Counted from the first letter of the stretch, positions 9,010 through 30,279 are shown. The stretch is DNA of 64,000 nucleotides from Zygnema circumcarinatum SAG 698-1b (GCA_037447605.1 CM074806.1:3782001-3846000), one strand, 5' to 3'. Translations and numbers: made by a program. Notes: a model not told the origin generated them from the letters alone.

Positions 9010-9945
9010 CTACACCGGTGTCCGCACCCCCTTGAGCCGCGGCGTGTCGCCGAGCAGCCCCGCCATCCACGCCCACATGGAGGAGGGCCGCCCCTCGCCC
9101 GCCTTGGAGGAGGAGAAAGACTGCCGCCATGGCTCGGAAGCTTCGGAGCTTTCTTCGAGCTCCGCCGCCTCCTCCGCCAGCAGCAGCGCCTCCTCCTGCA
9201 GCCGCAGGGCCGCCAGGACCTGCTCCGCCTGCATCACTCCCCACGCCGCCTCCTTCACACGTGCGCGTGCAGCTTCCATCCTCAGCTCGTCACAGGCAAC
9301 CTCCGCATCTGCACATTCGACAATTAGAAACCAAAAGGTTAAGTGACAGTTGAGGAAATTTCAATATGCGGAAAAGAAATTTGCAAACTTACTAGCCTCC
9401 CCTCCCCCTCTCCCCACGCCCGAGAGAGAGCGGCACTCACCATGGCAGATCGCACGTGCGGGCAAGCTCATGGTCCTCGAAAGGCCCCTTCGGGGAAGCT
9501 GCACATCCGCGTATCCTGCGGAGGCGGTCCGCAGCAAGCAGCTCTGCCTTCCCCCATCCTCCCGCCATGGCTGGCACTCCTCCTTCTCTTCCTCCAACCT
9601 CCCTACTGCCTCCTCGCTCCTCCTCTCGTAGAACCTTTGCCAGCCATCCTCCTCTCCTTCGTCGTCCGAGCCGCTTCCCATCCCCCCATCATCCCCAAGC
9701 CTCCTGAGCATGTCCCAGTCCTCCACAAAGCCCACGGGATCCATCACCCTCCACTCCTCCTCCGACCATCCCTCTACGCCGAACCTCTCCTCGGTCACGT
9801 CGGCCATGTCCGCCTCCTGCCCCTCTGCCGAGCGCGCCTCCGGGAAGTCGAACACGTTGGTAGGAGAGGTGGGCGGGGAGAAGTGCCGGTAGCAGGCTCC
9901 GGCAGCCGCCTTGACCTCTGCGAGCTCTCCTCCGCGGCAGTCCAT
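9010..9945 (-). CDS. Unknown family protein, paralogue A (exons 9945-9441, 9308-9010; 267 aa)
   Basis: Phase-1 GTGAGT...GTGCAG intron joins two open exons with a total length divisible by 3. Contains SPTNVFDFPE, LSRTMSLP and ACDELRMEAARARVKEAAWGVMQAEQVLAAL, shared with the two neighbouring paralogues. Confidence 0.85.
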
Positions 9946-10699
9946 GGCGGCCCGTACTGCTACAGCTGCGCAGAGGCTCCGCTCAGTACAGCGCTTGGCT
10001 GGAAGTCCGCTTGGCCCTCAGGCTCCCCCTATATCTATGTATATATGTATGCTTGCATGTACGTACGGGATGTACGTATGTATGGTTCAGGCATGGGGGG
10101 AAGGGCAAGGATTCGGGGCAGGGGGGATGCACCGGGACCTGGGGTGCCAGGGGGGCGGGAGCCGCGTCAGGGACGGATTGAGCTGACGAGGATGGTGGGA
10201 TTGGACCAATGAGAGGCGCCATAAAGATAGGCTTTGGATTGCATCGGCAAGGGGAGGGGGGAGGTGGAGATTTGGAGGAGGATTTTCAGGGGATCTGGTT
10301 GGTCCATTAAATGAAGGAGGATCTAAAAGATTTGAAACGAATCTAATAATTTGGCGTATCCTGGGTTTGGTGGGGGACAGTGCCACATTTGGCGAATAGT
10401 GTGGCAGAGAAAGGTATGAACACGTCGGACAGATCTGATACTGCTCAATAATGTCGGTGCCAAACACTGTGAAAGGATCGCGGGACAACATGCCAGGGTG
10501 GCGACAATGCTGTACGGAGATATCATTGACTGCCATACGCAAATAACTTACTAAGATATCAGTACTAGTACAATTGCACGATTTTGAAGTTACATGAGCT
10601 AACAATAAATGTACTGAATTCAAAAACAAACCTTGCCAGCACAAATCGTCTGCAACTCTTTCAAGATCGAGAGGTCTAATTAACAATAACCGTCGAGAT

Positions 10700-11300
10700 A
10701 CACAGCACGCCAAGCGACGACAAAGCTAAGTATCCGCCTCGGAACGATCGCCGCTCCGCGAATCTTTTCCCGCTCCGCCATTGGCTGCACAGGCCAAGGA
10801 GGATGGGCCGTACACTTCGTACAGTTTCCGTCCGCCTTCTGATGACGGGAGCGGACGGACTCTGACCGAAACGGTTACGAGGAGAGCGCTGATTGGCGGA
10901 CGCGGTGCCACAGTCACTGTACGGACATGTTTCGTACAATAAGCTCAGACAGTGTACGGCCCATTGATCCGCGTGTTCGCTCTGACGTGCTTGTGACCGT
11001 ACAGATATTTGTCCGGAGGTGCCGTACAGAACAGCGCCGTGTCAAGATCTTGTCTCGTCCACAAACGAAAAATCCAAACGGGGGGAATCCGGGCGGCGCA
11101 GACCGCACAGAGGCTCACCCCCGTCCGTCGCTGTCCGTCACTGTCCGTCGGCGGCACCTGCTCACGAGTCACGACAGAAACGCCAAAATCTGCCGCCCGG
11201 CCGCAACTGGGCCGCCCTGAAGCCGACCAGTTCTAACCTGGCGGACACGTGACCGAACCTGATTGGCCCTGTGCCAAACTTTTGTCTGTTCGCACAGGCC
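10700..11300. promoter_or_regulatory. GC/CpG- and GTAC-rich bidirectional promoter island between paralogues A and B
   Basis: Lies between two divergent starts. Repeated CGTAC/GTACG, TGGGCC, CCAAT-like ATTGG and ACGTG motifs. Confidence 0.55.
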
Positions 11301-11664
11301 AAGACTCCATGTCAGCATGCCCCTTGCCTTTGCTGACGTGGTGAACTCCGACTCCTCCAATCAGAGCGCCGAACAACCCTCCAAATGTTCCCGTTCCAGA
11401 GAGCGTGATGACGTGGCAGCAGAGCGCCCCTGCCATGATGGCGCGCAGGTGGCGCCGTATCATTCGCCGCGCGCCCATTGGCCCGCGTCCCCCTTGCCGC
11501 CATGCCGCCGGCTTTAAAGAAAACCGCCTCTTCTCGGAGGGAGGGAGGGAGAGAGAGAGGGAGAGGGAGAGGAGGAGAGAGAGGGAGGTAGCAGAAGCGG
11601 AGGCAGGAATACAAACAGTTTCTAAGGAAACAAAGATTAAAATTTGGGATAAGGAAGGAGCAGA

Positions 11665-12639
11665 ATGAAGGGCGCGCGGGCAGCCATGGAGGGGGGAGGC
11701 GAGTGCGTGCTCGGGGGAGGGGACGGTGCAGAGATACTGGGGAGCAGCGCTTCCAGAGGGCTTCCGTGCTTGAAGACGCCGCGGAGTGAGAGGGAGGCCG
11801 AGGGGGGCGATGCGAACTCCCCCTCGACTCCCTTCGACTTCCCCGACGGCGGCGAGGAGGACCGCGGCGCGGAGAAGGGGAAGGGCGGGCGGTGCTCTGC
11901 GCCGGGGTCGCCTCTGAATGGGAGGCGGCAGGACATGGCGGGGGGGGGAGGAGGGGGGGGGAGGGCGAGGAGGGAGGGGAGGGGCGGGGAAGAGGACAGT
12001 GGGAGCTTTGGGGGCGACGAGCAGGCCTTCGCCGCAAGGCGGCTCGACCGCTCGGCGAGCCTGCCGATGCATCTCGTGTGGAAAGGTGAGGGAGGTCCTG
12101 CATTAGGCTAAGCTCGAATTATAGAAACGGCGGCATTTTATGATGCGGAGCACGCTAAAGCGCAGGCTACAGAGAACAATGCTGACTTGTTCAGACATGC
12201 TTGTGCTTCTCCAAGTCGATTATCTCCTTTTCGCTGTTTTTTTTTTTGTTGTTGTACGGTATTGGAGCAGGTCGACGTTGGTGCTGTTCCTAGATCTGAC
12301 CTTTGCCTTCTCGTTCTCACGGCAGATGCCGAGGCGGCCTGCGATGAGCTGACGATGGAGGCCGCGCGGATGCGCGTAAAGCACGCCGCGTGGCGCGTGA
12401 TGGAGGCGGAGCAGGCCGTGGCGGCGCTGACGGGCTCCTTCCGGCGGAGCCAAACCATGAGGACGGGCGGCGGCCGGCAGGGGGCGGACCCCCCTCGCCA
12501 GTCGCGATCGTTCCTTCCGGCTATACGGTCGTGGCGCACACTGTGGGCAGCCATAGCCGGACCACGAAGCAGCAGCAGCAGCAGCAGAAGCAGCAGCAAA
12601 ACGGGTTCAGATGAGGCAAAAGCGGCAAGGAGGGGATAA
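11665..12639 (+). CDS. Unknown family protein, paralogue B (exons 11665-12085, 12326-12639; 244 aa)
   Basis: Same phase-1 intron position as A and C. Contains SPSTPFDFPD, LDRSASLP and ACDELTMEAARMRVKHAAWRVMEAEQAVAAL. Confidence 0.85.
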
Positions 12640-14009
12640 GCTTTGTTCAGCGGAGGAGGACTTCATCCTCGGCGGCGGAGGATGAAGTCCTCCGCCGCTT
12701 CATTCGAGGTTAGCAATAATGAGACTTGCGATGGGATCCTGTTCAACACATCCGCTGAACAGAGCAGGTCACATCTGCACCTGCTTCTGTAGCAAGTGCG
12801 GGTCATTCGCTTATTCCAGGTGCTTACTTCGGGTTATGGAGGTCCGGAGCGAAGTTGACTGGCGACATCAAGATAAGGCTTGCAACCGTTGGTTGCACCG
12901 CGGCAGTTTATTTCATGGATTCAACATTTGAATCAGGAGCAGTGATCGTTTATTCCTTTAGATGGATGGGCGAGAAAAGGATCTTAAGACAAGGCACTTT
13001 TAGGATGGCAGCCCTCGATTCAAATGTTTGAAGTTCAGCGATACAACTCTCACTAGTCTTGTTACATCTGAATAGACGGCTCTCTGGCGGAAACCTGCCT
13101 AGGAACGCCTTTTTGTTTGGTGTTGCTTTGTGAAAGTAGTTTGACTACTACTGTAAATAAACTGATTGGTAATATTTAAGAACGTTGGTTTTGTTTTTCT
13201 TTCTTTGTTTTTCTTTTCTTATCCTTCGCTTCTGTCCCAGTGATGCTTTGCATTTGCTCACAGGCAACTGGAACAGCGATATTCGAAATGCAGGCGGAGT
13301 TTCGCCCTTGCACGCAGCAACCATTATTGACGGCAGGATGAAGAAACAGTCTGATGTGCATCCAAACATTCAAGCCTCTTCGGCATTCGAGATATTGGTT
13401 TACAACTACACGTCATTCAGCGTCACAAAACACTCCCATGCGCATGCGTGCGACATGACATGCCATGATATGACATGACATGACATCTGGGCACAAATGA
13501 CTTAAAAGCATGAGCGACAACAATGGAACTTTCAACAAAGCAAGACACCGAGTCAGAGAGAGAAGCCTTCCTTGGTTATTTCTCATTCCCTACAGCTCTA
13601 CTACCCATCGCTACCTGCTCAGTTTACACATACCCGCGCTGGAAATGGCCGCCATGACTCATGGCAGAACCGTCCGAGGTCCGACGCATCTAACAGCAGA
13701 CTTGTTCCCTTGCTACACCTACAGCGAGAAGAGAATTTCCTCGTAGACGGGGTTGAATTTACAAATGTAGAATAAAATTAATGAAAGTATGAATAGCACG
13801 AATGATTGAATGGGCTAATTTTCCTTCTCCTTACTCCAATCTCCCGTCAATGTACACACACGCACGCGCTTCCGACCATCTTCATCATCACTTATCTCAC
13901 CACTCCTCGTTCATGGCTCTCCACGAGCCTCCTCGACCGTGTAAAAACAAACCCCCCCTCCCCCCCCCCAACGATGGCGCCAATGATCAAAACTTCCCCC
14001 CTCCCTCCA

Positions 14010-14088
14010 TTCCCCCTCCCTCCATTCCCCCCTCCCTCCCTCCCTCCCCCCTCCCTCCCTCCCTCCCTCCCTCCCTTCCTCCCTCCCT
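14010..14088 (-). repeat. (GGGA)n-rich tract just 3' of the paralogue C stop codon
   Basis: The plus strand reads (CCCT)n. A shorter equivalent follows the paralogue A stop (8965-9010). Confidence 0.85.
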
Positions 14089-14110
14089 GAGGGCAGCAGC
14101 CGCGCTCCCT

Positions 14111-14973
14111 TCAGGCAATTGGCGTCTGCAGGTCGAGCCCCTCCCTCTCCTTCGCGGTCGCGTTCCAGAAGGATCGCAGGCACTTGGCGGCGTCCGAGAG
14201 CGTCCTCGCGGGCTTGCGCCGCGGCCCCCGCGGAGTGCCGCCCCCCGGCCCGCCCTCGGGGAGGAGGCGCCGCGGGGAGGACCGCTCCTCCTCCTGCAGC
14301 CGCATGGCGGCCACGACCTGCTCCGCCTCCATCACCTGCCACGCCGCGTGCTTCACCCGGATGCGCGCAGCCTCCACCTCGTCCTCGTCGCATGTCGCCC
14401 CAAAATCTGCACACCATGAATGCACACATTCGCGTCAGACAGAACTCGCCGCCATCTGCGTTACACAAGCAGCCATCGTTAAAAGCACGCAGAGGGGGGT
14501 GGACATTCTCTCTCACTACCTTCGTTTCCGAGAGACACGGGGAGGCTGGAGGAGCGGAGCAGGCTCGGCTCGTCCGCAATGATGAGAGGCGGCGGCGCAG
14601 ACCACGTCCGCGGAGAGCTCGGGCGGCGCTGCGGCCTGTCCGCCATGGCGAGGACCTCCAGCCGCCGCTCCGCGCCCTTGCCCGTGAACGAGTCCGCGAA
14701 CCCCATGGAGGCCGTGCGCGCGGGGCGCACCTCCTTCTCCTCGTCGGCTGCGGAGGCCTTTGCGCCCTTCAGCATCCACTCCTGCCACGCGGCCGCCTTC
14801 TCGTCGAGGGAGACCTCTGCGTGGCTGCTATTGCCATGGCTGCCATTGCTGCTGTCGGGGAAGTCGAACACAGTGCTCGGCGAGTTCTGCGGACTGCTCG
14901 TCGCGACCTCGACCTCGTCCTCATCCCACTTGGGCCGCTCCGCCGCAAAGTGGTCGAAGTCGATCAGTGCCAT
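14111..14973 (-). CDS. Unknown family protein, paralogue C (exons 14973-14520, 14406-14111; 249 aa)
   Basis: Same phase-1 intron position. Contains SPSTVFDFPD, LLRSSSLP and TCDEDEVEAARIRVKHAAWQVMEAEQVVAAM. Confidence 0.85.
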
Positions 14974-18645: not shown

Positions 18646-21600
18646 TTATGATGATCGATTGGGTTGCCACGATGTCATGGCGAGCAGAGGCTTGTCGTCC
18701 CATGTGAGAATAAGGCAGCCTTCTTCTTTCAACAGTCCATAGCTCGACCTATACCTGCACAAAATGCACAGGAAAAAGACGAGGATGAGAGATCCCTCCG
18801 AGACGCTTTCCCAGTCATTGCTTGAAGGTTCAGGAAAGCGACTCTTGCATTCTACTTCCAAACGCCACGAACAGCAGAGCAGTGGAAATAGATCGACCAT
18901 TGCTAATAGATTCTGGTCCTCGGTATTGTCTACAGGCTTCATTTGGCCATGGTCAATTCTAAAGACAAACAGATGAGAAAATGCCACTGTCAAGGTGGGC
19001 GAGAGGGAGAACCGGAAACGCGAAGTGAAAGCTGCCTACTCACGTTTGTAAAAGGGCCTTGACTGTTATGACCATGCCTTCACTGACAGGTCGAGGATTG
19101 AACCCAACGGTTCGCATCAGCTCCTGCCATCGGCCCGCCAACTCCTGTCTTTTTCCACAGCCCTTTCCTCCTTCAGCGACCACATTTACGATGGCCCGCC
19201 CAAGAACTTGTTGCTCAAATAAACGTCGCGCTGCCAGGTCTCTAGGAATAGCTTCCTCAATAGACTCAAAAAGTGAGGAATAGTAGTACAATGCTTCATA
19301 AAATCGAGCCAGAAAGAAGGGTGAGTTGTGGTTTGTGTGCTGTTCTACAATAGTGCACACTTTTGGATTCAAAGATCGAAAAGTACGAAGCACATGCTCG
19401 CATGAGCTTGCTGACAAGCGAAAGTTGTCCAAAAGCTGATGAAGACGGAGTGAGAAGTTGACAGCTATGGCCTCTCCATTCCTCATGTCCAAAATGTTGG
19501 CCGCCAAGTCCTCCAGGCGACAAAACACCGGATGATATTCGAAAGGCACGCCCCACAACTTCGCAACCCTCTGCAAACAAACAACCCGACGGTAAATCAG
19601 CATGCAGACATGCTCCGCCACATACACTTCCTCTGCAACATGCCTTCATTAAAGAGGTCCATCATATGTGATTTTGACGATCCTCTGCTTTTTGAATCAA
19701 AGAGAATGTTAGAGGTAAGATTACCTTCAATTTTTCACCGACGTTCAGAAGACAATAAGGAGAATTTCCTTCCCCCTGTTGGAACTCAATGGCTGTCAGA
19801 CGGACAACAGGTGGTCCTCCTGGCCGAGCTGCTAGAGCTTGGATAAGGGCAGGCCATTGAAGACCAAACCCAGTCCCACAATCCATGATGTGAACGCTGT
19901 TCTCCCCTTTAAAGGCTTCCAAGATTGCGCTGTTCGCTGCTACTTGACCAAATGTCAGGTAAGGGCTTGCATTCATCACAACCTGCACAAGTCCGGACAG
20001 ACAGCATCAAATAGAGTGTCAAAAATACTGGCGAAATCAGACTCGTTAAAGTTCCAGGGACGACTAGTGACGAGCAGCAATCTTGGCTGAAACAACCGCA
20101 AAACGACAAACGACAAGATGAGGCACTTCGCCTGTGTACCTTATAGAAAACACCACCAATTTCCAGTTCTCAATTAAGTAATAGTTCTGCTCAAAATAAA
20201 AGCCGACTAAAAGCTGTCTAGGAACTTCCACATAAAATCCACCCCGTACATGCAGGTAATTTAGTGAAAGACTATCGTGTTTCAATGTGGAAAGTATCTC
20301 TGCAACCATCATACCTACATGCCGTTACAAATGTGAAAGAAATGCTAACTGACTCACCTGGAAAGACTCCAAGATATGCCTCGCTCTTTGACTACAGGAC
20401 TTGCCATTTTCGCCAGCGTTTATAGAGGAGCTCGTGTCTTCGACCACAGTCCCAACTTCCGAACAACTGGGCTTACACGGTTTTTGACACTCGTCAACTA
20501 TTTTGTCGCCCGACATTCTTGCATTGAGACCTTGTAAGAAGTATGCTGATAGCCTCTGCTGAGCATCACCATAGACGGATGCGACTTCAGTTAGCTTAGC
20601 GAGCAAGTCAACTACTCTTGACTGATCGTCTGATACAATTGCCTTGGCAACTTCGATGAGAAGTTCCATAGCTGGAAGTGTGCTCTCTTGATGAACATTA
20701 GCCCTCTGTCCCTGATCACTAGGGCTGAAATGCCCATTGGGTGGTCTGCTTGATGCAGTCGTGACAAGCGTTGCCTTTTTCTTGTTGCATTCATTCAATA
20801 TCTTACCTAGAGGTTCTTGAGCATGCAGCACTTCTAAGCTCAAACCGGGATGTTTAGATACGTCTGCAAGGATCTCACTCGACATTAATTCTCCTCGAGT
20901 ACTAGCTTCTTCAGCCACATGCTCATTAGTAAAATAGTCCGCAAGCAAGTCATACGCTTCTTCCGCCTCCAAACCTCCAACACTTGCACTCTGGAATTCA
21001 GCAGCGTCTTCCGCAGGCGTCACTCCGTCCTTGGTCACAGCGGCTGCTGCAGTCAAATCTTCTGCACTATCAAGGAACTGCTGCATCTCCAAAAATGCAT
21101 CCTCTAAACCATCCAACCCTCTAAAAAAGTCTTCCTCCATGACTGCGCTTGCCCCATGACTATCCACTTCCTGAAATATGTCGCCAGCCAATCCAGTACC
21201 CTGTGATCCTTTTTTCGCTTCTGGCCGATCGGAAGCAGTTCTAGACGCTGTATAATCAGTACCATTCATTGGCCCTTGTCTTACGGATTCGACCAATGGA
21301 ACGGCAGATGATGCAGCTGTGGCACTTGACAGCTCGGGAAGATGGTCGTACGCTCGCATGTGTGTCGAATTTGATCGAGTCCTCATCCATAGATTTTGTA
21401 AAGTGTTTGTCAGGTTTCGTGAATTCCCAACATCGTCTTTCCCAGACCTAACTCTCTTTAAGCCCTTGCTTTGAGTCTCTGCAGAGCACAATTCGAAAAG
21501 TAAGACCTCATGTGCACCAGTCAGATTCTTCAACAATGAAATATTCGCGAACCTGGGGTGCTTTTCTAGGGATGGACCAAGCATTAAACAAACAAATTTT

Positions 21601-22267
21601 TGCGTGAAAACTTTGTCATCAGAGGGCATCAAAATATCTCCTCATACACATACGCATGTCCAGCGTGAAGTACTTTCAGCATGACATAGATACATTTGTC
21701 AATTCAAGTTTGCAGCAGCACACGCAGCATAGAAGGATCATGAGGCGAAAGAGCTAGAAGTAATTGCACATGAAAGTGTACATTCAGAACATCGCCACCT
21801 CTGAAACAGCTGCTGGCAAATCACTTAAGAAGTGTTCAGACTGATCTACTCCAGATAAAACATTTTTGCCCGAAATAAGTCAGCCACCATTACGGAATAG
21901 TCTACCAACTTTAAAATCACACCAGGATGCCAAATCCTTCCAGAACATTAAACAGTAGAGAAACTAGGAGATCATTAAGTAAAATCGTCAGGTAAAACCT
22001 GAACGGGAGATAAAAAACCGCACCTCCCATCTGCTTGCTGCTCTTGCCGTTGGTGCTGGCAACAGGAACTGCCTCTTCCAAGACACGTTCTGAACGAGAG
22101 CCTCCATGGCTGCCACCGCTGGCCGGTTGCTTGCTCTGCAACCATGCCTTCTGCAACCTCGACTCCAAATCCTTTGGAAGAGTCTCCCTGTCAGTGACCA
22201 CCTTTGCAGGGATGAGAGGGCCGTTGTTGATCCTGCCGAACTCGCGACGAGCGAATCCTGCAGTCAT
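18646..22267 (-). CDS. GRAS-domain transcriptional regulator, copy 1 (exons 22267-22024, 21478-20358, 19982-19725, 19570-19044, 18754-18646; start codon uncertain)
   Basis: [14 protein letters not shown]...[15 protein letters not shown]; VHIID region [20 protein letters not shown]...VHIMD...[18 protein letters not shown]; [34 protein letters not shown]; [23 protein letters not shown]. All four subdomains are in order. Confidence 0.95.
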
Positions 22268-23499
22268 GGCGCCCTCTTTCACTTCCTCCTGCTGTCCTTG
22301 CAGCCGCCTTTTATGCTCAAATGCTTTAGGAAGATGCCATGGCGGCCATGGACAGGTCAGCTCCAAGAGCAGAACTTGAAGCTTTCATCGTTGCAGGCAA
22401 ACAAACGACCATGCCTGCACAGTTGAAAGACGCGCACAGTACCTCTAATTGGGACGCCACGGTACCCTCTAGAAGGACGACGCGCTCCAAGTTATTCAAA
22501 ATTGGGCGAATCCGCGCGGCCGGCCGGTTTCCGTGAGCAGCGTACAGTTTCAAAATCCGCGTTATCCGAAAATAGCGGGACTGTGATGCTGAATTTCCAC
22601 AGCGAACCAGGCCACTTTCCCATCGCCCACTTTCATCTCGGCGGGTCCTGTCCTGCCTCCCCATTCAAAGATCTGGCGAATCTAGACTACCAATGAAAAG
22701 CCGTCGCGTGTCCGCTGACGTGGACACTGCCATGCTGGGCGCGCAGCGGTGCATGCGATGGCGCGCCGCAGAGTGGGTTTGCGGGCCATGCTTAAGCCAT
22801 GGTGGCCGGGCCATGGCCGCCGCCTCCTGCTGCCTGGCTGCCTACTTCTGCTCTGCCTCCCCTTGCATCGGGGCCTCGCCCGTGCTGAGGGCTTTCAGCG
22901 AATCCCTGATCCTGCATCCGTGGGAATCATTAGGGCTATGCAGGACAGTTTAGGGCGAATTTGCTGCTTTCAAGGAACGCCTGCCCCCCCCCCCCCCCCA
23001 CTGCTGCAAGAGAACCTAGAAGCCTCCCTCTCTCTCTTACTCTCCTTCCCTTTCCCTCTCCTTTTAATTAGCCCCTCTCCCTCTCTCTCTCGGTTTCGCG
23101 CTACCTCTTTCTCGCTTGTTGAAACCACCCCTATCTTCTTTTTTCTCCATTTAATGCAGGCCCTCCCCCTCCCTCGGCTTCATGCTCTCCCTCTCACGAT
23201 TCCCTGCTCTCTTTCTCAGTTCCATGAGATATCTCTCTCCCCATCCTCTCTCTCTATTGTTGAGATTCAAGAATTAGGCTTCAGGGACTTAGTGGGGGAA
23301 GTACAGCTTTTAAGCATTCGGGTTTAGTGTTTGAGAGTGGGATGTGGCATTGATCCCACGATGGCGATAATGCCATCAGATGTGCATGGACAAAGTCAGC
23401 ATGGGAACCACGAAGGACTGGCTGCAAAGGACCCAAGCACAAAAGAAAAAGCTAGGAGCTGGAAGCTACGCCTAGGGTCAACCTGAAGGGGGGGGGGGC

Positions 23500-23990
23500 T
23501 TGCACGAATTAGGGCTCCGAGATTACGGCAGGGCTCGGCTCGGCGCGCATTCGCAAGTTCGTACAACATACGGCCGCGCCTCCGGAGGGCCGGGACCGGG
23601 AGGGCCCGCGCTCGCCGTACATCCAGCAGTACTGTACTACAGTACAGTACAGTATACGGTACGAAAAATCTTGCTGTACTGTATGTACTGTACAGTATCA
23701 CCTGATACTGTTCGTACGTATCACGTGGCCCTGCCGCCCATCCACGTGCCACTCTTACTCGCGCGCTCCAATCAGAACTTTGCCGTATGACGCTCGCAGA
23801 CAAGGGCAGGGCCGGACCTTCCGTATCAAAAAGTACAGTACGGTCATTATATTTCTCAGATTTTTTCAAACTGGACATAGAACGTCAGTGGCCAGTCGCC
23901 TGCGACGGGAACGGTCGCATGTGTCCTCCCTCCCTGCCCGCCGGCCGTCCTGTTTCGCAAGCACGCACGCAAGCACGCAAGCAAGCAGGT
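23500..23990. promoter_or_regulatory. GTAC-saturated core of the bidirectional GRAS promoter
   Basis: About 13 GTAC tetramers counted by eye in ~290 bp (23560-23845), plus ACGTGGC at 23723. Confidence 0.6.
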
Positions 23991-24459
23991 ATTTTCCGCG
24001 GCCCTCTCCCGGGGGGTGGGACAGGTAGGGCAGAGTCCCCCGCGTTGTCCTGGAAGGCCTCCTTCCCTCCCTGTCCCCCCTTCTCCCTCCATCTCCACTC
24101 TGGCCACTCCTCCCCTCCTCCTGCCTCCCTCCCTACCTACCTCCCTCCCTACCTACCTCCCTCCCTCCCCGCTCGCTCTGCTCCTTCCAGCAGCATCTGT
24201 AAGGTTCTCGAGGCGGAGGAGTCGTAAAGCTTCCTGCGAGGCCATCCGTGCGTACGTGTGTCCCTGCTGCAATGTGGCAGAGAGAGCCACCGCTTTCCGA
24301 GGGGGATGGAGTGGCTGGGTGCGGATTGCTGGTCGAGGGGACGGGGGCCTAAGGGAAGTGTGCAGTTAGCAGGCTTTGATCGCAGCAGTGCGAGTCTCGC
24401 TTAGCAGATCGGGTTCCGTGCTGTCTTAGGGTTTCCCATAGTTTTTGTAGGGTTTGGAG

Positions 24460-27400
24460 ATGACGGGCTCAATGTGGAGGAAGGATTCTCGGACGGAGCA
24501 TGGGAAGGCTGCCGTGGTGGAGCCTGCGAGAGCAGTTGCAGACAGGCAGGGCGTTCCTAAGGACTTGGAGGCGCGCCTGCACTTGGCATGGCTGCGCTCG
24601 CAGCTCAATGCTGTCATCTCCAAAGCAGACATTTCAGGTAATGCGGGCACGTCAATGCTCTGTCTCTGCTTATTGAACTGACCTCGAGGTGAAGACTAGA
24701 TATGTCAGTTATTTTTTCCTTATTTTTGCATATGCACTGACGTTGATTCTTCCAGGTTGCGTCTGGAAAGGCATTTTTTTGAGGCCTGGCGATTTCTGGT
24801 GTTCGTTGATATTCACCCGTGAATTGTACTAAAAGGGAATGCCTTTGCTTGAGATGTTGTGGGATCATTTGCCAATATTTCTCTCGCATTGAGTGTTGGA
24901 TTTTTTGCGATGACGTGGGCTTTTTTGCGTGTGGAAATTTTGAAATACAGCACTTTAACATATTGTTCACAGTATGACTATTCTGCAAGCAGGAACATGC
25001 TGTTGGGTTCATTATTTGAATCCACACAATCCTTTAACGCAGTGTGATTCTGACTTACGGACACTAGAGGCTAGCAGCCACTGTACACATGTATGAAACT
25101 CATGTATCAGTATCGATCACTTAGTAAGCGCCACTTCTTGTTGTACTTGCTGTTCCAGAAGCGGTTTTTCCACAAAGAATTTGACGTGTTTGCGCCTTAA
25201 TTTTTTTTCTCTAGGTGGAGGAAACATTAGCCGGAACCGAGCAAGCAAAGCAGCTGAACAGGAGGCGAGTCGATGTAGTGACCCAGTTCAGCCGGGGCCA
25301 ATTAATGAGTCGTTCTCCATCCTTGCAGCTCAGCAAGTTCCTGCTTCCAGTGCTCCCACCCTCCATTCCACCAATAATGCCGATGTGAATCACTCCCTTG
25401 AGGCCCCTTCGAGAGGTTTATCGGTGGAAGAGCGGGTTCGATCAGACTTAAACCCTCGGATCCATGACCTCTGGAATGCAGTGGGATCTGGGTCACCTAT
25501 ATCCAGGGGCAGCAATGATTCAGCCGAGCAGTCGTATACTTTGCATGCTGACTCACATCACGATTCGCTCGTGGTAAACCTCATTTATAAGGAAGCAAAC
25601 ATGAACTTTGATTTGACGGAGGAGGACCTGTTTAAGGGTTTGGAAGATTTGAGTGGTGCCTTTGGGGAGCTGGAAGAGCTGCTTCCAGATGGGCCTGGAG
25701 GCTTTGTCTCCCCTGCTCTTGCAGCTCACGATAAAAAGGACATTCCTCCTGAGAACAATGTGCAGAACAACGTGACTTTGGAGCAAAGGACTTTCCTACA
25801 GGAACTCGTTGATGAGCAGGGTGATGTTTTGGAGGCAGGCAGGAAATGGAATGGGATTTCTGCTCCTCCTGCTAGAGACCTTGATAAAGTACCCTCTCTC
25901 CCAGCAGTGAGGAACAACAGGCATCCAAGGCTTCTCCCTGAAGGGGCTGCAAGTCAGCAACAAAGAGGCTCGTTGAAAAGGTCTCTCTACAAGCAGACAG
26001 AGGAGTCTTCAACAGCAGATAGCTCGAGTGTAGAACGTCGGGCTGTTCCGCGAACTAATGGGGCTCAAGCGGGAGCTCAGGCAGCAGCCATGGCGGGAGC
26101 TTCTGCAGCTGCTACAGTTAAGGCTCAAGGAGTAAATCCCATTGAATTGTTGGTAGCTGTGGCCCAAGCCATCGTGAAGAGGGATCAGACTGCTGCCCAC
26201 AAGCTGCTGGGACAGCTTTTCAATGTGGCGTCTATCTACGGAGATGCATCGCAGAGGCTCTCTGCGTACTTTCTTGAGGGGCTCACAGCGAGAATTTCGG
26301 GTGAGATGCCAAGGGATCATATGGCGCTTATCCAGCCTGTGGATTACAAGGTGCCCAATTGCACACACAACATCATGGAGGCGTTCCAAGTGCGTTTCTG
26401 AACTCCCTGCGAGCTTTTGCACATGTTAAGCTTGTGAAAGGACTAGCGAAGATTAGGATGTAGCATCGTAACTTGAGGTTTTGTCATATTCTGGCTTACC
26501 TTGCCAACAAGGCGGCACAGGAAGGAAACTAACCCTAAAGATCCCTTCCAAAGGTCTTACATAAATCATTCTTTCGCGTGGGAGTGTTTTCTGCAGTCTT
26601 TAATGGCATCCACACCGTACCTCACCTTCGGCCAGGTGACCGTGAACTGCGCAATTTTGGAGTCCTTTGTGGGAGTTGAGAAGGTCCATATTGTTGACTT
26701 TGGAATCGGCCATGGCCTCCAGTGGCCTCCTCTCTTCCAGGCCCTCTCTGCTCGGCCGGGAGGTCCCCCTCTTGTGAGGATGACTGCAATCGACCTTCCC
26801 TCCCATGGCACCCGGCGAGCTTACTGCATTGAGGAGACGGGCGAGCGGCTGAAGGTGAGTCGGCAGACGCTCCTCAAAACTTGGAAAATCTGAAAGTGTC
26901 TGAAAAAATAAAGTATATGGCAGTTATTACATCCAACAAAGGATTATTAACACCTGATATGAAGATTTTTTAAAAGGTTAAAAGGTTAAAAGGTTCATAG
27001 ATCTTGTAAGAACTTAGCGCAGCCAGTTTCTGGACAGGATTAAATAGACCGGGTCCTGCAACTAAAAGACCAAGAGAAGAAAAATTGGAGGACAGGTTGC
27101 CGTTGCTCCCTGGAAAGAATGTGAATTCAATATAGTTTGACGGTAAATTTACTCTTTTATAGTATGTTTTCACATAAGAATGTCACCATCTTCGGAGATC
27201 TTCTTGAAATGGATTTTGTTTCAGTGCCCGAGTCTCACTTAACTGGACAGAAGAAAATTATGTGGGAACGTAATACCCCTCCATCACCATCACGGTTGGA
27301 ACATGTCCTCCGAATGAATGGGACCTAAGACAGTTATATTTTCTGGTCATCTTATGACCGTGAATCATTCAAAAGAACTCGTTGCATATATCAGTTGATT

Positions 27401-28310
27401 AACCGGGTCTCTGGATATCTGTTTCTCTCGTTGCAGGCTATAGCTTGGACATATAACATTGCTTTGGAGTATCATCCTATTCCCTCCCGTTTAGAAAATG
27501 TCCTCCCTGAACGGATAAACTTATATGATGATGAAGTGTTGGCAGTGAACTGCTCACTTCGGCTTCATCAGCTTTTGGATGAGACCGCGACGCCCACCAA
27601 TCCTCGAAGTATAGTTTTGCGTACAATAAGAGCTCTTAAACCCAAAATATTTACAGTCGTGGAACAGCATACAAACCATAACTCGCCCTTCTTTCTTGCA
27701 CGCTTTTATGAAGCCCTGTACTACTATGCTGGCCTGTTCGACTCTGTGGATGCATCTGTCCCAGCCTACAGTCCGGAACGACTTGTTTTTGAGCAGCAGG
27801 TTTTGGGGAGGTCCATTGTAAACTGCATTGCCAACGAAGGAGTAAATCGAGTTGAGAGACAGGAGTGCTTTGGCCACTGGCAGGCAAGAATGCAGAAAGC
27901 TGGGTTTCGGCAGCGACTTTTGAGTGCAAATGTGGCAGGCATCGCGCATGAGCTTCTGAAGACGTGAGACTTCCCAGCACCCTTTTGCCGCCTTTCCTTT
28001 CCTTTCCTTTCATGGTTCTCTATCTGATTTGTAGAAGTTGCCAACTCTTCCATACAGTTTCACCGAGAATGTGTGCGAGTTTGGGAAAGACTCTCAGTTT
28101 GGAGGGCTATCACGGGCATGATTGAGATGACGGTCTTCCTCGCTACTTGTATGACAAGACGAGTGTGTTGGTACGCCTTATTGCAGATACCATAATGGAT
28201 ATGGTCTCCGGTTATATGAGGCAGACGGTCTCCTTCTGACTTGGCAGAACATGCCTCTCCTCTGCGTATCCACATGGGAGCCGGATGATGTTGGAGGTGG
28301 ATGCCGATAG
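24460..28310 (+). CDS. GRAS-domain transcriptional regulator, copy 2 (exons 24460-24637, 25215-26389, 26597-26854, 27437-27963, 28187-28310)
   Basis: ELLVAVAQAI...[18 protein letters not shown]; [20 protein letters not shown]...VHIVDFGIGHGLQWPPLFQALSARPGGPP; [23 protein letters not shown]; RVERQE; GLLLTWQNMPLLCVSTW. Intron positions match copy 1. Confidence 0.95.
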
Positions 28311-30279
28311 AAGCGGCGAGCAGTCATGGCCCATCCCACCTAAGTGGGCCCATGCCCGTTGTCGGAAGGATCGAGCATTGAATCACATAGATTTTGGTAA
28401 CTTAGTCTTCACACCCTCCCTGTATGCGATGTGAAGGTGCCTTTGATCCTTCTTTTTCTCTGCCGGCAACGTTTTTATCGCAGGGGAAAGTACGAGAGAA
28501 AGCCCTAAAGAGGCCTTGCTGCAGTTGCACTGTTCTTAAAGAAAGTGACACTTTTCAACTTCTGATGGTTCTTATGGTGTTTGTTGTTGTGAAGGGCATT
28601 ATCAACAGCCCCATCGGGCGAAGGCTGAGCTGCGCGTCCTTCATAGAGTCTGAGTTTCGCCAGCTTTGCTGTGTCGCTACCCCAACTGTGCTTGTGCCGT
28701 GCGCAGAGCCGTGGGATTAGGCTCGCCCTTGATGCCCTCTGCACGTGACAACTGTCCAGTCCCTCGTGTCCAGTCCGTTTGTAAATTGTCGCCGCACTTT
28801 AAAAGGAACTCTCAACTGTGTCATCATCCAACTGCACTGAACTGTGCTGCGACTTCGACTCCAGGAGTTCAGCGAACACATCTGAAGTAGCCCGCCCTTG
28901 CAAGTGCAATGCAGCTGGTAAGGATTTAGTTTTACTGTTGGGGACTTGTAGAAAGCTTCTTGGCTTTGTTTTTGTAATTGCTAGAGATGCCTCAGCGGTT
29001 AGCCTGTGCGCAGGAACCACCTTTTTTGGAAAAGAGAGTACAAGATTGTGGGGGTTACGCGCCTTCTGCAGCTGGGTCGTGTGTAGCGGATGTAGGCCGT
29101 AGGATTGACGACCAAAAAACTAAAAATGATAAATGAAAATGGTCCTAAATGATCCTATTTGTATTATGGAAGAATGAAAATGTATTTGCCTGATGACGGT
29201 GTGCTGGTTGTTTCTAGAATTCTAAGAGTTTGTGTTTGTATATGATCCTAGTGTTGTTCTTTAGTCATAGTCACTAGTCTTTGGACCTCACATAAAAAAT
29301 ACCTCACACTATCTCCCATTCTCTCTGGAAATTTAACCTCTTTAATGCGCCTCATTGCGTGGCGCTAGTCCCATCAGGCAGGCGGTTGGCTGCACACGGT
29401 TCAAGTTCAGCACTTGGAAAAACTTCGTCGTGGAGATCGACCCCCCTTCCTCCCCCCCCCCTCGGTCTGCACCTCCAAAGGCTCAAGTTTTCGACCCGCG
29501 GAGGCGCAAACCGAGTGGGCGAGTTTTTTGGCGAAAACCTGCGAGCGAAGTTTTCCAACTTGCTCCAACCGGTTGAACTTCAACCGTCAGCGTGCGCAAG
29601 CTGGCTGGATGGAACTTGGAAGGAGGAGGGGCGCCGCAATTCTCGCGACTAGCACCAACCAGAACGCGCCACGTGGACTCCACGTGGCACCAATCAAACA
29701 GCGAATGGGGAGGTAGGCTGCAAAATGTTTGGAGTGCCCGAGGACTTGACGCGGTCTGACGTGCCACGTGTTGGCGTCTCGTAGTTGACGTTTCGTTAGT
29801 TTACCCCATTTTTCTATTCGGGTGTGAAGGAGAGACCGAATTTCGAGAGGCTCATTTAACCTCCCCCGCCTCCAGCAGTGCAACTTTTCGCACGTGCTAA
29901 ATGACATAAAAAAAGTTGACCCGGTCAGCAAAAGTTGAAGAAGGACGATCCCTGAGGACTAGTGGAATAGAGGGCCAAAGTTCAAGGAACTCGAATCACG
30001 AGTGGACTCCAGCCCTCGGTCAGAGGGGCCAAGGCCAGCCAAGACTTCGAGATTCTAATGTCCGATCATGTGAGATTCTGCAGTTCAATATCTGCCGGCC
30101 GCATCTCTTTGAGATTTCACCGTTCACAATAAGCGCTGGATACGCGCAGCAGTATCGAATTTCACCACCGTCATTGATTCGATCTTTACTTGCACGGGAG
30201 ATCTTACGCCTTAAATATTCAGATTTTACCTGACGTGGCATTCCTCTTTTGCGATACGAGGTGAATCTTGAAAGATCTT

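What the first reader, a model, noticed from the sequence alone, without database searches (positions are those of the whole stretch)
19863..26716. Both GRAS proteins keep an intact methyltransferase motif I (D-x-G-x-G-x-G)
Seen: copy 1 [11 protein letters not shown] (19895-19863) and copy 2 VHIVDFGIGHG (26684-26716). Established: the GRAS domain has a class I SAM-dependent methyltransferase (Rossmann) fold and is related to bacterial proteins; this loop is the SAM-binding motif I. The land-plant subfamilies I recall have lost one or more of these glycines (e.g. DFSMSQG, DLDIMQG, DFQIAQG, DFGIVQG). Retaining all three glycines in two otherwise diverged paralogues suggests selection. Inference: these may be transitional GRAS proteins that still bind SAM/SAH or a related ligand, or even retain catalysis.
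Basis: partly seen in the sequence, partly recalled or inferred. Interest (0 to 1): 0.8.

Follow-up and report, generated by a model that had tools for sequence, protein, structure and literature searches.

The report
Algal GRAS genes keep bacterial SAM-loop
Two neighbouring, expressed GRAS regulator genes of a zygnematophyte alga still carry the glycine-rich cofactor-binding loop of their bacterial methyltransferase-like ancestors, which every sampled land-plant GRAS protein has lost; this makes them good test cases for how an enzyme fold became a plant transcription regulator, though cofactor binding itself is untested.

Summary
Both peptides are at the stated coordinates. They lie in two head-to-head, five-exon GRAS genes of 752 and 749 aa. 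Copy 1's introns are confirmed exactly by transcript contigs.

The pattern reflects shared ancestry, not chance.
- 16 of 16 bacterial GRAS proteins fetched here have D-x-G-x-G-x-G. One Kofleriaceae protein has GIGHGLQW, identical to copy 2.
- The zygnematophyte "core" GRAS clade has G-G-[G/A] in 17 of 18 sequences.
- None of 222 land-plant-type GRAS sequences has all three glycines.
- The first and especially the middle glycine are diagnostic (7% in land plants). The third is not: 96% in land plants, G or A in algae.

The motif II acid, motif III acid and strand-4 acid are also present. An AF2 model of copy 2's orthologue superposes on whole SAM-bound methyltransferases (Z 18).

Against catalysis, the algal clade has replaced several polar residues that are invariant in bacterial GRAS. 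No Pfam methyltransferase model matches. The copy-1 lineage has lost the universal RVER loop.

Verdict: an ancestral motif I is retained under constraint. SAM/SAH binding is plausible (about 0.4) but untested, and catalysis is unlikely (about 0.1). Earlier scan notes on this genome mention other GRAS paralogues, but none mentions this loop.

The parts
18646..22267 (-). GRAS gene copy 1, coding region of 752 aa in 5 exons: 22267-22024, 21478-20358, 19982-19725, 19570-19044 and 18754-18646 (stop included). The transcript starts near 22415.
   Evidence: All four introns are GT-AG and are confirmed by transcript contigs in four runs, with joints at 21478/22024, 20356/19980 (+2), 19725/19570 and 19042/18752 (+2). 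ORF, coordinates. Pfam GRAS matches on the exons.
19725..19982 (-). Copy 1 exon 3. It encodes the helix before strand 1, strand 1, the motif I loop, helix A and strand 2.
   Evidence: Pfam GRAS profile positions 85-165, E 5.7e-27. Both exon borders are confirmed by reads.
19863..19883 (-). Copy 1 motif I core, D-C-G-T-G-F-G (residues 489-495).
   Evidence: The orthologues P0007 and P0121 have DFGTGFG.
19785..19796 (-). Copy 1 end of strand 2, T-A-I-E. The Glu sits at the motif II position that binds the ribose hydroxyls in class I methyltransferases.
   Evidence: The position follows from the strand assignment in the AF2 model of P0005. The motif definition comes from PMC1282579.
24472..28310 (+). 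GRAS gene copy 2, coding model of 749 aa in 5 exons: 24472-24637, 25215-26389, 26597-26854, 27437-27963 and 28187-28310 (stop included).
   Evidence: The three introns inside the GRAS domain are GT-AG and sit at the same positions and phases as in copy 1. Exon 1 and intron 1 are inferred from homology to the N-terminus of P0267 plus the best GT..polypyrimidine-AG pair. RNA-like runs hold 0.67-0.74 of the stretch's sampled words, roughly the predicted exon share of 25000-28400. No reads were laid on copy 2.
26597..26854 (+). Copy 2 exon 3, with strand 1, the motif I loop, helix A and strand 2.
   Evidence: Pfam GRAS profile positions 84-166, E 6.2e-28.
26696..26716 (+). Copy 2 motif I core, D-F-G-I-G-H-G (residues 481-487).
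   Evidence: The loop is identical in orthologues P0005, P0267 and P0122 and in Mesotaenium P0130. The bacterial Kofleriaceae protein P0280 has DLGIGHGLQW.
26783..26794 (+). Copy 2 end of strand 2, T-A-I-D (motif II acid).
22416..24471 (.). Divergent intergenic region between the two head-to-head genes. The start codons are 2.2 kb apart. It is a candidate shared (bidirectional) promoter.
   Evidence: The position follows from the gene models. Promoter function was not tested.
22024..22267 (-). Copy 1 coding exon 1, with an N-terminal motif shared with copy 2 (..R-E[15 protein letters not shown]..). The counterpart in copy 2 is 24472-24637 on the + strand (..R-Q-G-V-P-K-D-L-E-A-R-L-H-L-A-W-L..).
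   Evidence: tblastn of P0267 and P0005 hits both exons. No Pfam family matches.

Best explanation
These are two ancient paralogues of the Zygnematophyceae-specific GRAS clade. Each is about 750 aa, with a long N-terminal region that matches no Pfam family and a C-terminal GRAS domain. They sit head to head in the genome. Copy 1 is shown to be transcribed and spliced; for copy 2 the evidence is indirect.

Their GRAS domain has the class I (Rossmann) SAM-methyltransferase fold. It keeps the ancestral bacterial form of the cofactor site:
- an acidic residue in strand 1;
- the G-x-G-x-G loop after strand 1;
- an acidic residue at the end of strand 2;
- an acid near the end of strand 3;
- an acid at the start of strand 4.

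Shown: this loop is the state of bacterial GRAS proteins. It is conserved throughout the algal core clade and is lost in all sampled land-plant-type GRAS.

Inferred: land plants put bulky residues (L, M, K, Q, Y) at the first two glycine positions without harming the fold. Keeping glycine there across the algal clade therefore points to a constraint other than folding. The simplest such constraint is that the pocket still holds an adenosyl ligand such as SAM or SAH.

I think the proteins most likely act as GRAS-type transcriptional co-regulators whose pocket is occupied or gated by that ligand, not as enzymes. The reason is that many polar residues invariant in bacterial GRAS elsewhere in the domain have been replaced.
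For: - Sequence and gene models.
- GRAS membership.
- Orthologues exist for each copy in other zygnematophytes at 51-56% identity, with the same loop, so the duplication is old and the loop is stable.
- Loop counts: bacterial GGG 16/16. Algal core GGG 9, GGA 8, GAG 1 of 18. Land-plant type 0/222 (loop list).
- The bacterial sequences are truly bacterial: Sorangium chromosomes of 13.8-14.6 Mb and a Kofleriaceae contig.
- Tree: plant GRAS form one clade (support 100) inside bacterial GRAS, and the algal core clade has support 100. Placing the algal core as sister to all other plant GRAS is not rejected (p-AU 0.55).
- Other motif positions in the algal core: strand-1 D 17/17, motif II D/E 16/17, motif III E 14/17, strand-4 E 17/17. 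Motif definitions from PMC1282579.
- Only 4 of 78 bacterial-conserved columns are shared by the algal core but not by land plants. One is the middle glycine. The other three lie in the two helices just before strand 1.
- AF2 model of P0005:400-791, which has the same loop as copy 2: pLDDT 92, strand 1 at 117-123, loop at 124-130, strand 2 ending in D154.
- The model aligns to solved GRAS domains at Z 40-45. It aligns to whole SAM/SAH-bound methyltransferases (BelI, CmoA, YecO, CysG(N-16)) at Z 18, rmsd 2.6-3.2 A.
Against: - No binding data exist for any algal or bacterial GRAS protein.
- Solved land-plant GRAS domains have the cavity but showed no SAM or SAH binding by ITC (PMC5873383). The fold and cavity alone therefore do not imply binding.
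- The loop is highly conserved within every GRAS subfamily, including non-binders. The third glycine is 96% conserved in land plants. Loop conservation can therefore have structural or partner-binding reasons.
- The algal core has lost residues that are invariant in bacterial GRAS (H216Q, P248Q, D249H, H267Y, E297A, H313Q, R315P, A210C, A213R). Some of these could be needed for ligand binding.
- No Pfam methyltransferase family matches even at E up to 10.
- The bacterial GRAS profile gives only sub-threshold hits to methyltransferases in the PDB (E 0.7-2.2).
- The copy-1 lineage lacks the universal RVER loop.
- The model is of an orthologue, not of the window's own protein. No coordinates were available, so pocket volume and clashes were not examined.
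Confidence: 0.42

Rival explanations
1. Structural relic. The glycine loop is simply the unchanged ancestral turn between strand 1 and helix A. It is kept because in this clade it packs against other parts of the domain or against a protein partner. No nucleotide ligand is bound, and the proteins work like land-plant GRAS co-regulators.
For: - Land-plant GRAS domains keep the cavity and most other motif positions (strand-1 D 98%, strand-4 E 97%, motif II acid 70%), yet SHR-SCR bind no SAM or SAH.
- The loop is near-invariant within each land-plant subfamily (DFGILYG, DFQIAQG, DFNLMHG), so strong loop conservation does not need a cofactor.
- The algal core lost many residues that are invariant in bacterial GRAS.
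- No methyltransferase HMM matches.
Against: The fold tolerates bulky residues at the first two glycine positions, as the land-plant sequences show. Pure fold maintenance therefore does not explain 100% and 94% glycine across algal paralogues that are only 47% identical. The three other columns shared only by bacteria and the algal core lie in the helices just before strand 1, next to the loop in the sequence.
Confidence: 0.4
2. Active enzyme. The algal GRAS proteins are still SAM-dependent small-molecule methyltransferases, as was predicted in the literature for bacterial GRAS, fused to a regulatory N-terminal region.
For: - The SAM-side motifs are intact.
- The closest non-GRAS folds are small-molecule and natural-product methyltransferases.
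- From memory, because the paper is not held in the library: Zhang, Iyer and Aravind (2012) predicted that bacterial GRAS and a subset of plant GRAS are methylases.
Against: - Six bacterial-invariant polar residues (H216, D249, H267, E297, H313, R315), plus the bacterial-invariant P248, are replaced in 100% of algal core sequences.
- The copy-1 lineage also lacks RVER.
- The N-terminal region matches no Pfam family, an architecture more like land-plant GRAS regulators than the standalone bacterial GRAS proteins.
- No activity has been shown even for bacterial GRAS; my literature searches found none.
Confidence: 0.1
3. No special meaning. D-x-G-x-G-x-G is a common variant of the VHIID loop across GRAS proteins, and its presence in two paralogues is coincidence.
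For: Each single glycine does occur in land plants: G1 53%, G3 96%, G2 7%. 129 of 222 land-plant-type sequences have two of the three. 12 of 222 have three small residues, for example DFGISYG.
Against: 0 of 222 land-plant-type sequences have all three glycines. This compares with 16/16 bacterial sequences and 17/18 algal core sequences with G-G-[G/A]. The pattern follows phylogeny exactly.
Confidence: 0.03

Closest known systems
Bacterial GRAS proteins (for example Sorangium cellulosum 'GRAS-like transcription factor' and Kofleriaceae 'GRAS family protein'; family described by Zhang, Iyer and Aravind 2012)
   Same: Same Pfam family. Same motif I (D-x-G-x-G-x-G-x-Q-W); the Kofleriaceae loop GIGHGLQW is identical to copy 2. 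Same motif II acid followed by Pro (T-G/A-I/V-D-L-P). Same F and G positions in the helices before strand 1.
   Different: The bacterial proteins are stand-alone domains of about 350-440 aa, encoded by intronless chromosomal genes. The algal proteins add about 350 N-terminal residues and have four introns. They have also replaced many bacterial-invariant residues (A210, A213, H216, P248, D249, H267, E297, H313, R315).
Zygnematophyte ('algal') GRAS clade (Closterium, Spirogloea, Mesotaenium, Penium; Hernandez-Garcia et al. bioRxiv 10.1101/398883; Penium genome bioRxiv 10.1101/835561)
   Same: The two genes fall inside this clade, which has support 100. The closest database proteins are unnamed zygnematophyte transcripts and Closterium, Spirogloea and Mesotaenium proteins.
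   Different: None in kind; they are new members of the clade. I did not find retention of the motif I loop in this clade mentioned in the papers I could search. A second algal clade (Spirogloea P0129 and P0268, Closterium P0131) has G-I-T-H-G, so not every algal GRAS keeps the loop.
Land-plant GRAS with solved structures (SCR, SHR, SCL3, OsSCL7, DELLA/RGA, NSP1/NSP2)
   Same: Same domain and fold: model versus structures Z 40-45, 31-38% identity; sequence E 1e-63 to 1e-23. Same alpha-helical cap plus alpha/beta core with a large internal cavity (PMC5873383).
   Different: Land-plant loops carry bulky residues at the first and/or middle glycine position (DFNLMHG, DFGLKQG, DLDLMQG, DFQIAQG, DFGILYG). 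SHR-SCR showed no SAM or SAH binding by ITC. Most land-plant GRAS genes are intronless (PMC9474926); these have four introns.
LISCL / SCL14-type land-plant GRAS
   Same: They keep the first and third glycines and the motif II acid (DFGILYG ... RITGIE/D). A few have a small middle residue (DFGISYG, DFGIAFG).
   Different: The middle glycine is replaced, mostly by Leu. They also differ from bacteria at the F84 and G97 columns that the algal core keeps.
Small class I SAM-dependent methyltransferases (BelI, CysG(N-16), CmoA, YecO, EgtD)
   Same: The whole chains superpose on model residues about 84-384 (Z 15-18, rmsd 2.6-4 A). Motifs I-IV are present at the topologically equivalent places.
   Different: Sequence identity is 12-15%. 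No Pfam methyltransferase model matches. GRAS adds an N-terminal helical cap and an extra strand-helix-strand segment. No catalytic residues can be assigned.

Membership tests
GRAS domain family (Pfam PF03514) | Profile match above the curated threshold (27 bits) across the domain | tested here: met
   All GRAS-domain exons of both copies match. Copy 1 scores 43, 95 and 164.5 bits. Copy 2 scores 42.8, 98.2 and 176.1 bits. Together they cover profile positions 3-342 of 374. The last exon carries the SAW-type end.
GRAS domain family (Pfam PF03514) | Ordered motifs LHRI, VHIID, LHRII, PFYRE and SAW, including the RVER loop | tested here: inconclusive
   Copy 2 has all of them ([24 protein letters not shown]). 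Copy 1 has VHIMD, the PFYRE region and TSW, but GCGKRQE in place of RVER. Its orthologues P0007 and P0121 also lack RVER.
GRAS domain family (Pfam PF03514) | Alpha-helical cap plus alpha/beta core fold | tested here: met
   AF2 model of the orthologue P0005:400-791 has pLDDT 92. It aligns at Z 40-45 to SHR, SCL3, SCL7 and RGA. The window's own spliced proteins could not be submitted by reference.
Zygnematophyte-specific (algal core) GRAS clade | Placement inside the clade in a tree that includes land-plant and bacterial GRAS | tested here: met
   Clade support is 100 in both the FastTree and IQ-TREE quick trees, with the loop columns left out.
DELLA subfamily | N-terminal DELLA/TVHYNP domain (PF12041) | tested here: not met
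   No Pfam family other than GRAS matches the N-terminal exons.
Class I (Rossmann-fold) SAM-dependent methyltransferases | Motif I: acidic residue in strand 1 followed by a G-x-G-x-G loop | tested here: met
   DCGTGFG and DFGIGHG sit directly after strand 1. Definition from PMC1282579.
Class I (Rossmann-fold) SAM-dependent methyltransferases | Motif II acid at the C-terminus of strand 2 (contacts the ribose hydroxyls) | tested here: met
   Copy 1 has TAIE and copy 2 has TAID. In the model, strand 2 (147-154) ends in D154. About 70% of land-plant GRAS also have this acid, so it does not discriminate.
Class I (Rossmann-fold) SAM-dependent methyltransferases | Motif III acid near the end of strand 3, and a D/E/N at the start of strand 4 | tested here: met
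   Copy 1 has RLED and copy 2 has RLEN after strand 3. Glu precedes strand 4 (EAIAVN and EVLAVN). Assignment is by topology, not by a residue-level structural alignment.
Class I (Rossmann-fold) SAM-dependent methyltransferases | Seven-stranded methyltransferase core fold | tested here: met
   Whole-chain superposition of BelI-SAM, CmoA, YecO-SAH and CysG(N-16)-SAH on the orthologue model gives Z 17.7-18.3. Foldseek E values are 1e-7 to 1e-6.
Class I (Rossmann-fold) SAM-dependent methyltransferases | Detectable sequence-profile similarity to a methyltransferase family | tested here: not met
   No Pfam methyltransferase family matches at E up to 10 for the exons or for P0005, P0007 and P0009. 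The bacterial GRAS profile gives only E 0.7-2.2 to Hen1 and BamL-type chains in the PDB. Protein-language-model neighbours outside GRAS are methyltransferases, but only at lead-level scores of 0.60-0.67.
Class I (Rossmann-fold) SAM-dependent methyltransferases | Binding of SAM or SAH, and methyl transfer | not testable with these tools
   Needs recombinant protein (ITC, thermal shift, activity assay), or at least model coordinates with a docked ligand. The tools return no coordinates.

The most novel reading that the evidence does not exclude
The algal core GRAS proteins still bind SAM or SAH in the ancestral pocket and use it, either as a methyl donor or as a metabolic signal that gates a transcriptional co-regulator. 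That would make them living intermediates between a bacterial small-molecule methyltransferase and the ligand-free GRAS regulators of land plants.
Probability: 0.35. Interest if true: 0.8.

Novelty: new variant of a known kind. Interest (0 to 1): 0.55.

Why it matters
GRAS regulators (DELLA, SCR/SHR, NSP, LISCL) control growth, patterning and symbiosis in land plants. They are thought to descend from a bacterial methyltransferase-like gene acquired before plants moved onto land. How an enzyme fold became a protein-interaction hub is unknown. The only binding tests, on land-plant proteins, were negative. This work shows that the sister lineage of land plants keeps the bacterial cofactor loop intact in a whole clade of expressed genes, while every sampled land-plant GRAS has lost it. 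That yields concrete proteins, and two defined glycine positions, with which to test whether loss of cofactor binding accompanied the change of function. If binding is found, algal GRAS would be metabolite-linked regulators. If not, the loop is a well-dated molecular fossil.

Tried and rejected
- Bacterial GRAS through the search for related loci on genome contigs. One scan used a plant alignment and one used P0238. Both found pattern matches but no relative. Bacterial sequences were reached only after recognising P0238, a 389-aa metagenome protein with DLGIGVG, as bacterial-type and using it for the last homologue search.
- Zhang, Iyer and Aravind (2012) could not be read by DOI, PMC id or PubMed id. 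What I say about it is from memory and from citing papers.
- Pfam at E up to 10, looking for any methyltransferase family: none found.
- AlphaFold DB cluster search, in the hope of bacterial or methyltransferase neighbours: the top 30 rows were all plant GRAS.
- Pocket volume and occlusion: not possible, because structure prediction returns no coordinates and /data holds none.
- Modelling the window's own proteins: not possible by reference, because they are spliced and I did not type long sequences. I modelled orthologue P0005, which has the same loop as copy 2.
- My first exon-1 model for copy 1 (ATG near 21629) was wrong. Reads showed a further 5' intron, and the model was corrected.
- The idea that the algal clade is simply 'more ancestral' overall was rejected. 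It has lost bacterial-invariant residues that land plants partly keep.
- Gene neighbourhoods of bacterial GRAS in Sorangium and Kofleriaceae gave no functional clue.
- Species identity: run and organism names are coded. The organism was not identified beyond a zygnematophyte whose own proteins do not appear among the database hits.

Full report
**1. Observation**

Window 19895-19863 on the minus strand translates to [11 protein letters not shown]. Window 26684-26716 on the plus strand translates to VHIVDFGIGHG. Both lie in exons that match Pfam GRAS (PF03514) at profile positions 84-166, with E 6e-27 and 6e-28. The flanking exons match the rest of the profile.

**2. Gene anatomy**

Both genes contain introns.

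For copy 1 (minus strand), I predicted three GT-AG introns inside the GRAS domain. Transcript contigs from four public runs show exactly these joints, plus a fourth intron further 5' (21479-22023) that I had missed. The corrected coding sequence has five exons: 22267-22024, 21478-20358, 19982-19725, 19570-19044 and 18754-18646. It encodes 752 aa.

Copy 2 (plus strand) has introns at the same three positions and phases in the GRAS domain. Its first coding exon (24472-24637) and first intron are inferred, not read-confirmed. The inference rests on homology to the N-terminus of orthologue P0267 and the best GT..polypyrimidine-AG pair. The model is 749 aa. RNA-like runs hold 0.67-0.74 of the sampled words of 25000-28400. 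That is roughly the predicted exon share of the stretch, so copy 2 is very probably expressed and spliced too.

The genes lie head to head, with start codons 2.2 kb apart. Their N-terminal halves match no Pfam family, and in particular carry no DELLA domain. They share a short motif in exon 1 (..P-K-D-L-E-x-R-L-x-x-A-W-L..) and an acidic E-E-D-[FL]-F-[RK]-G-L-[DE]-x-L stretch. The two GRAS domains are 47% identical.

**3. Relatives**

The genome's own proteins did not appear among the database hits. The nearest proteins are all from Zygnematophyceae:
- unnamed transcript-derived proteins (P0007 and P0121, P0005, P0267 and P0122, P0009);
- several Closterium species;
- Spirogloea muscicola;
- Mesotaenium endlicherianum.

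Copy 1 is orthologous to P0007 and P0121 (51-52% identity over about 750 aa, loop DFGTGFG). Copy 2 is orthologous to P0267 and P0005 (54-56% identity, loop DFGIGHG). The duplication therefore predates the split from those species, and each lineage has kept its own version of the loop.

**4. Tabulating the loop**

I aligned 284 GRAS sequences to one HMM. They came from three homologue searches and from one exhaustive search of cluster representatives. That last search used exon 4 of copy 2, which does not contain the loop, so its ranking is independent of the loop.

| Group | n | State of the three glycine positions |
|---|---|---|
| Bacterial GRAS | 16 | GGG 16 |
| Algal core clade | 18 | GGG 9, GGA 8, GAG 1 |
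| Second algal clade (Spirogloea, Closterium) | 3 | GTG 3 |
| Land-plant-type | 222 | GGG 0 |

- Per-position glycine frequencies in the land-plant-type set are G1 53%, G2 7% and G3 96%.
- Typical land-plant loops are DFGILYG (SCL14 type), DFQIAQG (PAT1 type) and DFNLMHG or DFGLKQG (DELLA).
- Twelve land-plant sequences have three small residues, for example DFGISYG.

The informative positions, however, are the first and especially the middle glycine. The third glycine is a general GRAS feature.

Caveat: SHR, HAM, LAS, NSP and SCL3-type subfamilies are thin in this sample, because hits were ranked by similarity to algal queries.

**5. Bacterial comparison**

Two pattern-based scans of prokaryotic genomes failed. 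One hit from the representative search, P0238, proved the way in. It is a 389-aa stand-alone GRAS domain on metagenome contigs next to a transposase-like ORF and an integrase fragment, and it carries DLGIGVG. Using it as the query returned 15 more proteins:
- Sorangium cellulosum and Sorangium sp. proteins, located on chromosomes of 13.8-14.6 Mb;
- a Kofleriaceae MAG protein;
- a Hymenobacteraceae MAG protein.

All 16 have D-[LI]-G-x-G-x-G-x-Q-W, and all 16 have Asp at the end of strand 2 followed by [LI]-P. The Kofleriaceae loop GIGHGLQW is identical to copy 2.

In a tree with the loop columns removed, plant GRAS form one clade (support 100) nested in bacterial GRAS. The algal core clade has support 100. 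The backbone among plant clades is weak. An AU test does not reject the algal core clade as sister to all other plant GRAS (p 0.55). The loop in the two window genes is therefore the ancestral bacterial state, retained.

**6. Other cofactor-site positions**

I used the motif definitions of Kozbial and Mushegian (PMC1282579) and the strand positions in an AF2 model. In the algal core clade:
- the strand-1 acid is present in 17/17;
- the motif II acid at the end of strand 2 in 16/17 (copy 1 Glu, copy 2 Asp);
- the motif III Glu after strand 3 in 14/17;
- the Glu at the start of strand 4 in 17/17.

Most land-plant GRAS keep these too (98%, 70%, 56% and 97%). Only the glycine loop separates the groups.

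**7. What else is shared with bacteria**

Of 78 columns conserved at 85% or more in bacterial GRAS, four are kept by the algal core but not by land plants. These are the middle glycine, plus an F, an L and a G in the two helices that precede strand 1.

In the other direction, sixteen bacterial-conserved columns are changed in both plant groups. The algal core has also fully replaced H216, H267, E297 and H313, which 33-52% of land-plant sequences still keep.

The algal proteins are thus a mosaic. They are bacterial-like around the loop and derived elsewhere. I could not assign these residues to the cofactor side or the substrate side, because no coordinates were available.

**8. Fold**

I therefore modelled the GRAS domain of P0005, copy 2's orthologue with the identical loop, using a 100-row alignment. 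The result was pLDDT 92.3 and pTM 0.91.
- Against solved GRAS domains it gives Z 40-45.
- Among the roughly 1000 top Foldseek matches that were realigned, the best non-GRAS structures are small SAM-dependent methyltransferases. Their whole chains superpose on model residues about 84-384: BelI-SAM Z 18.3 at rmsd 2.6 A, CmoA 18.1, YecO-SAH 18.0 and CysG(N-16)-SAH 17.9.
- At sequence level nothing links the proteins to a methyltransferase family. Protein-language-model neighbours outside GRAS are methyltransferases, but only at lead-level scores.

**9. What is known**

A review of the solved structures states that GRAS domains have a large cavity like SAM-methyltransferases but lack the SAM-binding motifs. 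It also states that SHR-SCR bound neither SAM nor SAH by ITC (PMC5873383). Those proteins lack the first and middle glycines, so they do not test the algal configuration.

The bacterial origin and methyltransferase fold of GRAS were proposed by Zhang, Iyer and Aravind (2012). I could not read that paper. From memory, it predicted that bacterial and a subset of plant GRAS proteins are methylases. The algal clade is described in bioRxiv 10.1101/398883 and 10.1101/835561.

In six full-text searches I found no statement that algal GRAS retain motif I, and no experiment on any bacterial or algal GRAS protein.

**10. Interpretation**

Shown:
- an ancestral, bacterial-type motif I is retained in two expressed paralogues and across their clade;
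- it is absent from sampled land-plant GRAS.

Inferred:
- Land plants replace the first two glycines with bulky residues and the fold survives. Their near-invariance in the algal clade therefore indicates a constraint other than folding.
- Ligand occupancy is the simplest candidate for that constraint.

Weighing against enzymatic activity are the loss of many bacterial-invariant polar residues, the regulator-like architecture, and, for the copy-1 lineage, the loss of the otherwise universal RVER loop.

My odds:

| Reading | Probability |
|---|---|
| Ligand-binding regulator | about 0.4 |
| Structural relic without ligand | about 0.4 |
| Active methyltransferase | about 0.1 |
| Coincidence | about 0.03 |

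**11. Novelty and value**

The genes are new members of a known clade of a known family. The feature is a variant not noted in the literature I could search: a eukaryotic GRAS clade with the complete bacterial cofactor loop. It turns a long-standing question, how the GRAS fold moved from enzyme to regulator, into a simple binding experiment with defined controls and two defined point mutations.

Earlier notes of this scan record other intron-rich GRAS paralogues and a related N-terminal motif elsewhere in this genome. None concerns the loop.

Noticed in passing
window 19100-19160 (- strand), copy 1 residues around ..[14 protein letters not shown]..: Copy 1 and its orthologues P0007 and P0121 lack the R-V-E-R loop. 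In this sample that loop is 100% conserved in bacterial GRAS and 94-100% in land-plant GRAS. Copy 2 keeps it (NRVERQE). By its position in the model and the cavity description in PMC5873383, the loop probably lies between two cap helices at the cavity (my inference).
   Followed up: partly
window 22024-22267 (-) and 24472-24637 (+): Both paralogues begin with a separate small exon encoding a shared motif (..[LV]-P-K-D-L-E-x-R-L-x-x-A-W-L..). The motif is also present in orthologues P0267 and P0005. It resembles the motif that another note of this scan (s1-350940) reports for GRAS paralogues elsewhere in the genome. No Pfam family matches.
   Followed up: partly
window 22416-24471: The two GRAS genes are arranged head to head, with about 2 kb between the copy 1 transcript start and the copy 2 start codon. 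This is a candidate bidirectional promoter for two paralogues that diverged long ago.
   Followed up: no
window 20900-21150 (-) and 25600-25700 (+): There is a conserved acidic stretch in the otherwise unalignable N-terminal halves ([22 protein letters not shown] and EEDLFKGLEDLSGAFGELEELL). Closterium P0001 has it too (VEEFLRGLDGLDNAFVELEDMF). It could be an activation or partner-binding motif.
   Followed up: no
P0279 (Hymenobacteraceae MAG): This bacterial GRAS domain is annotated in one 644-aa protein together with an aminotransferase domain (PF00155, 'histidinol-phosphate transaminase, partial'). It is either a real fusion or a gene-calling join on a 4.4-kb contig.
   Followed up: no
P0129 and P0268 (Spirogloea), P0131 (Closterium); A second zygnematophyte GRAS clade has G-I-T-H-G, with the middle glycine replaced by Thr. 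It groups apart from the core algal clade, so algae already hold both loop states.
   Followed up: partly
L001 2216-3364 (-) and L002 3858-4175 (+): The metagenome contigs carrying the bacterial-type GRAS protein P0238 also carry a 382-aa ORF without a Pfam match and an rve integrase fragment. This suggests a mobile-element neighbourhood.
   Followed up: partly
window 9010-14973: Another note on this window reports three paralogues of an unrecognised two-exon family upstream of the GRAS pair. I did not examine them.
   Followed up: no
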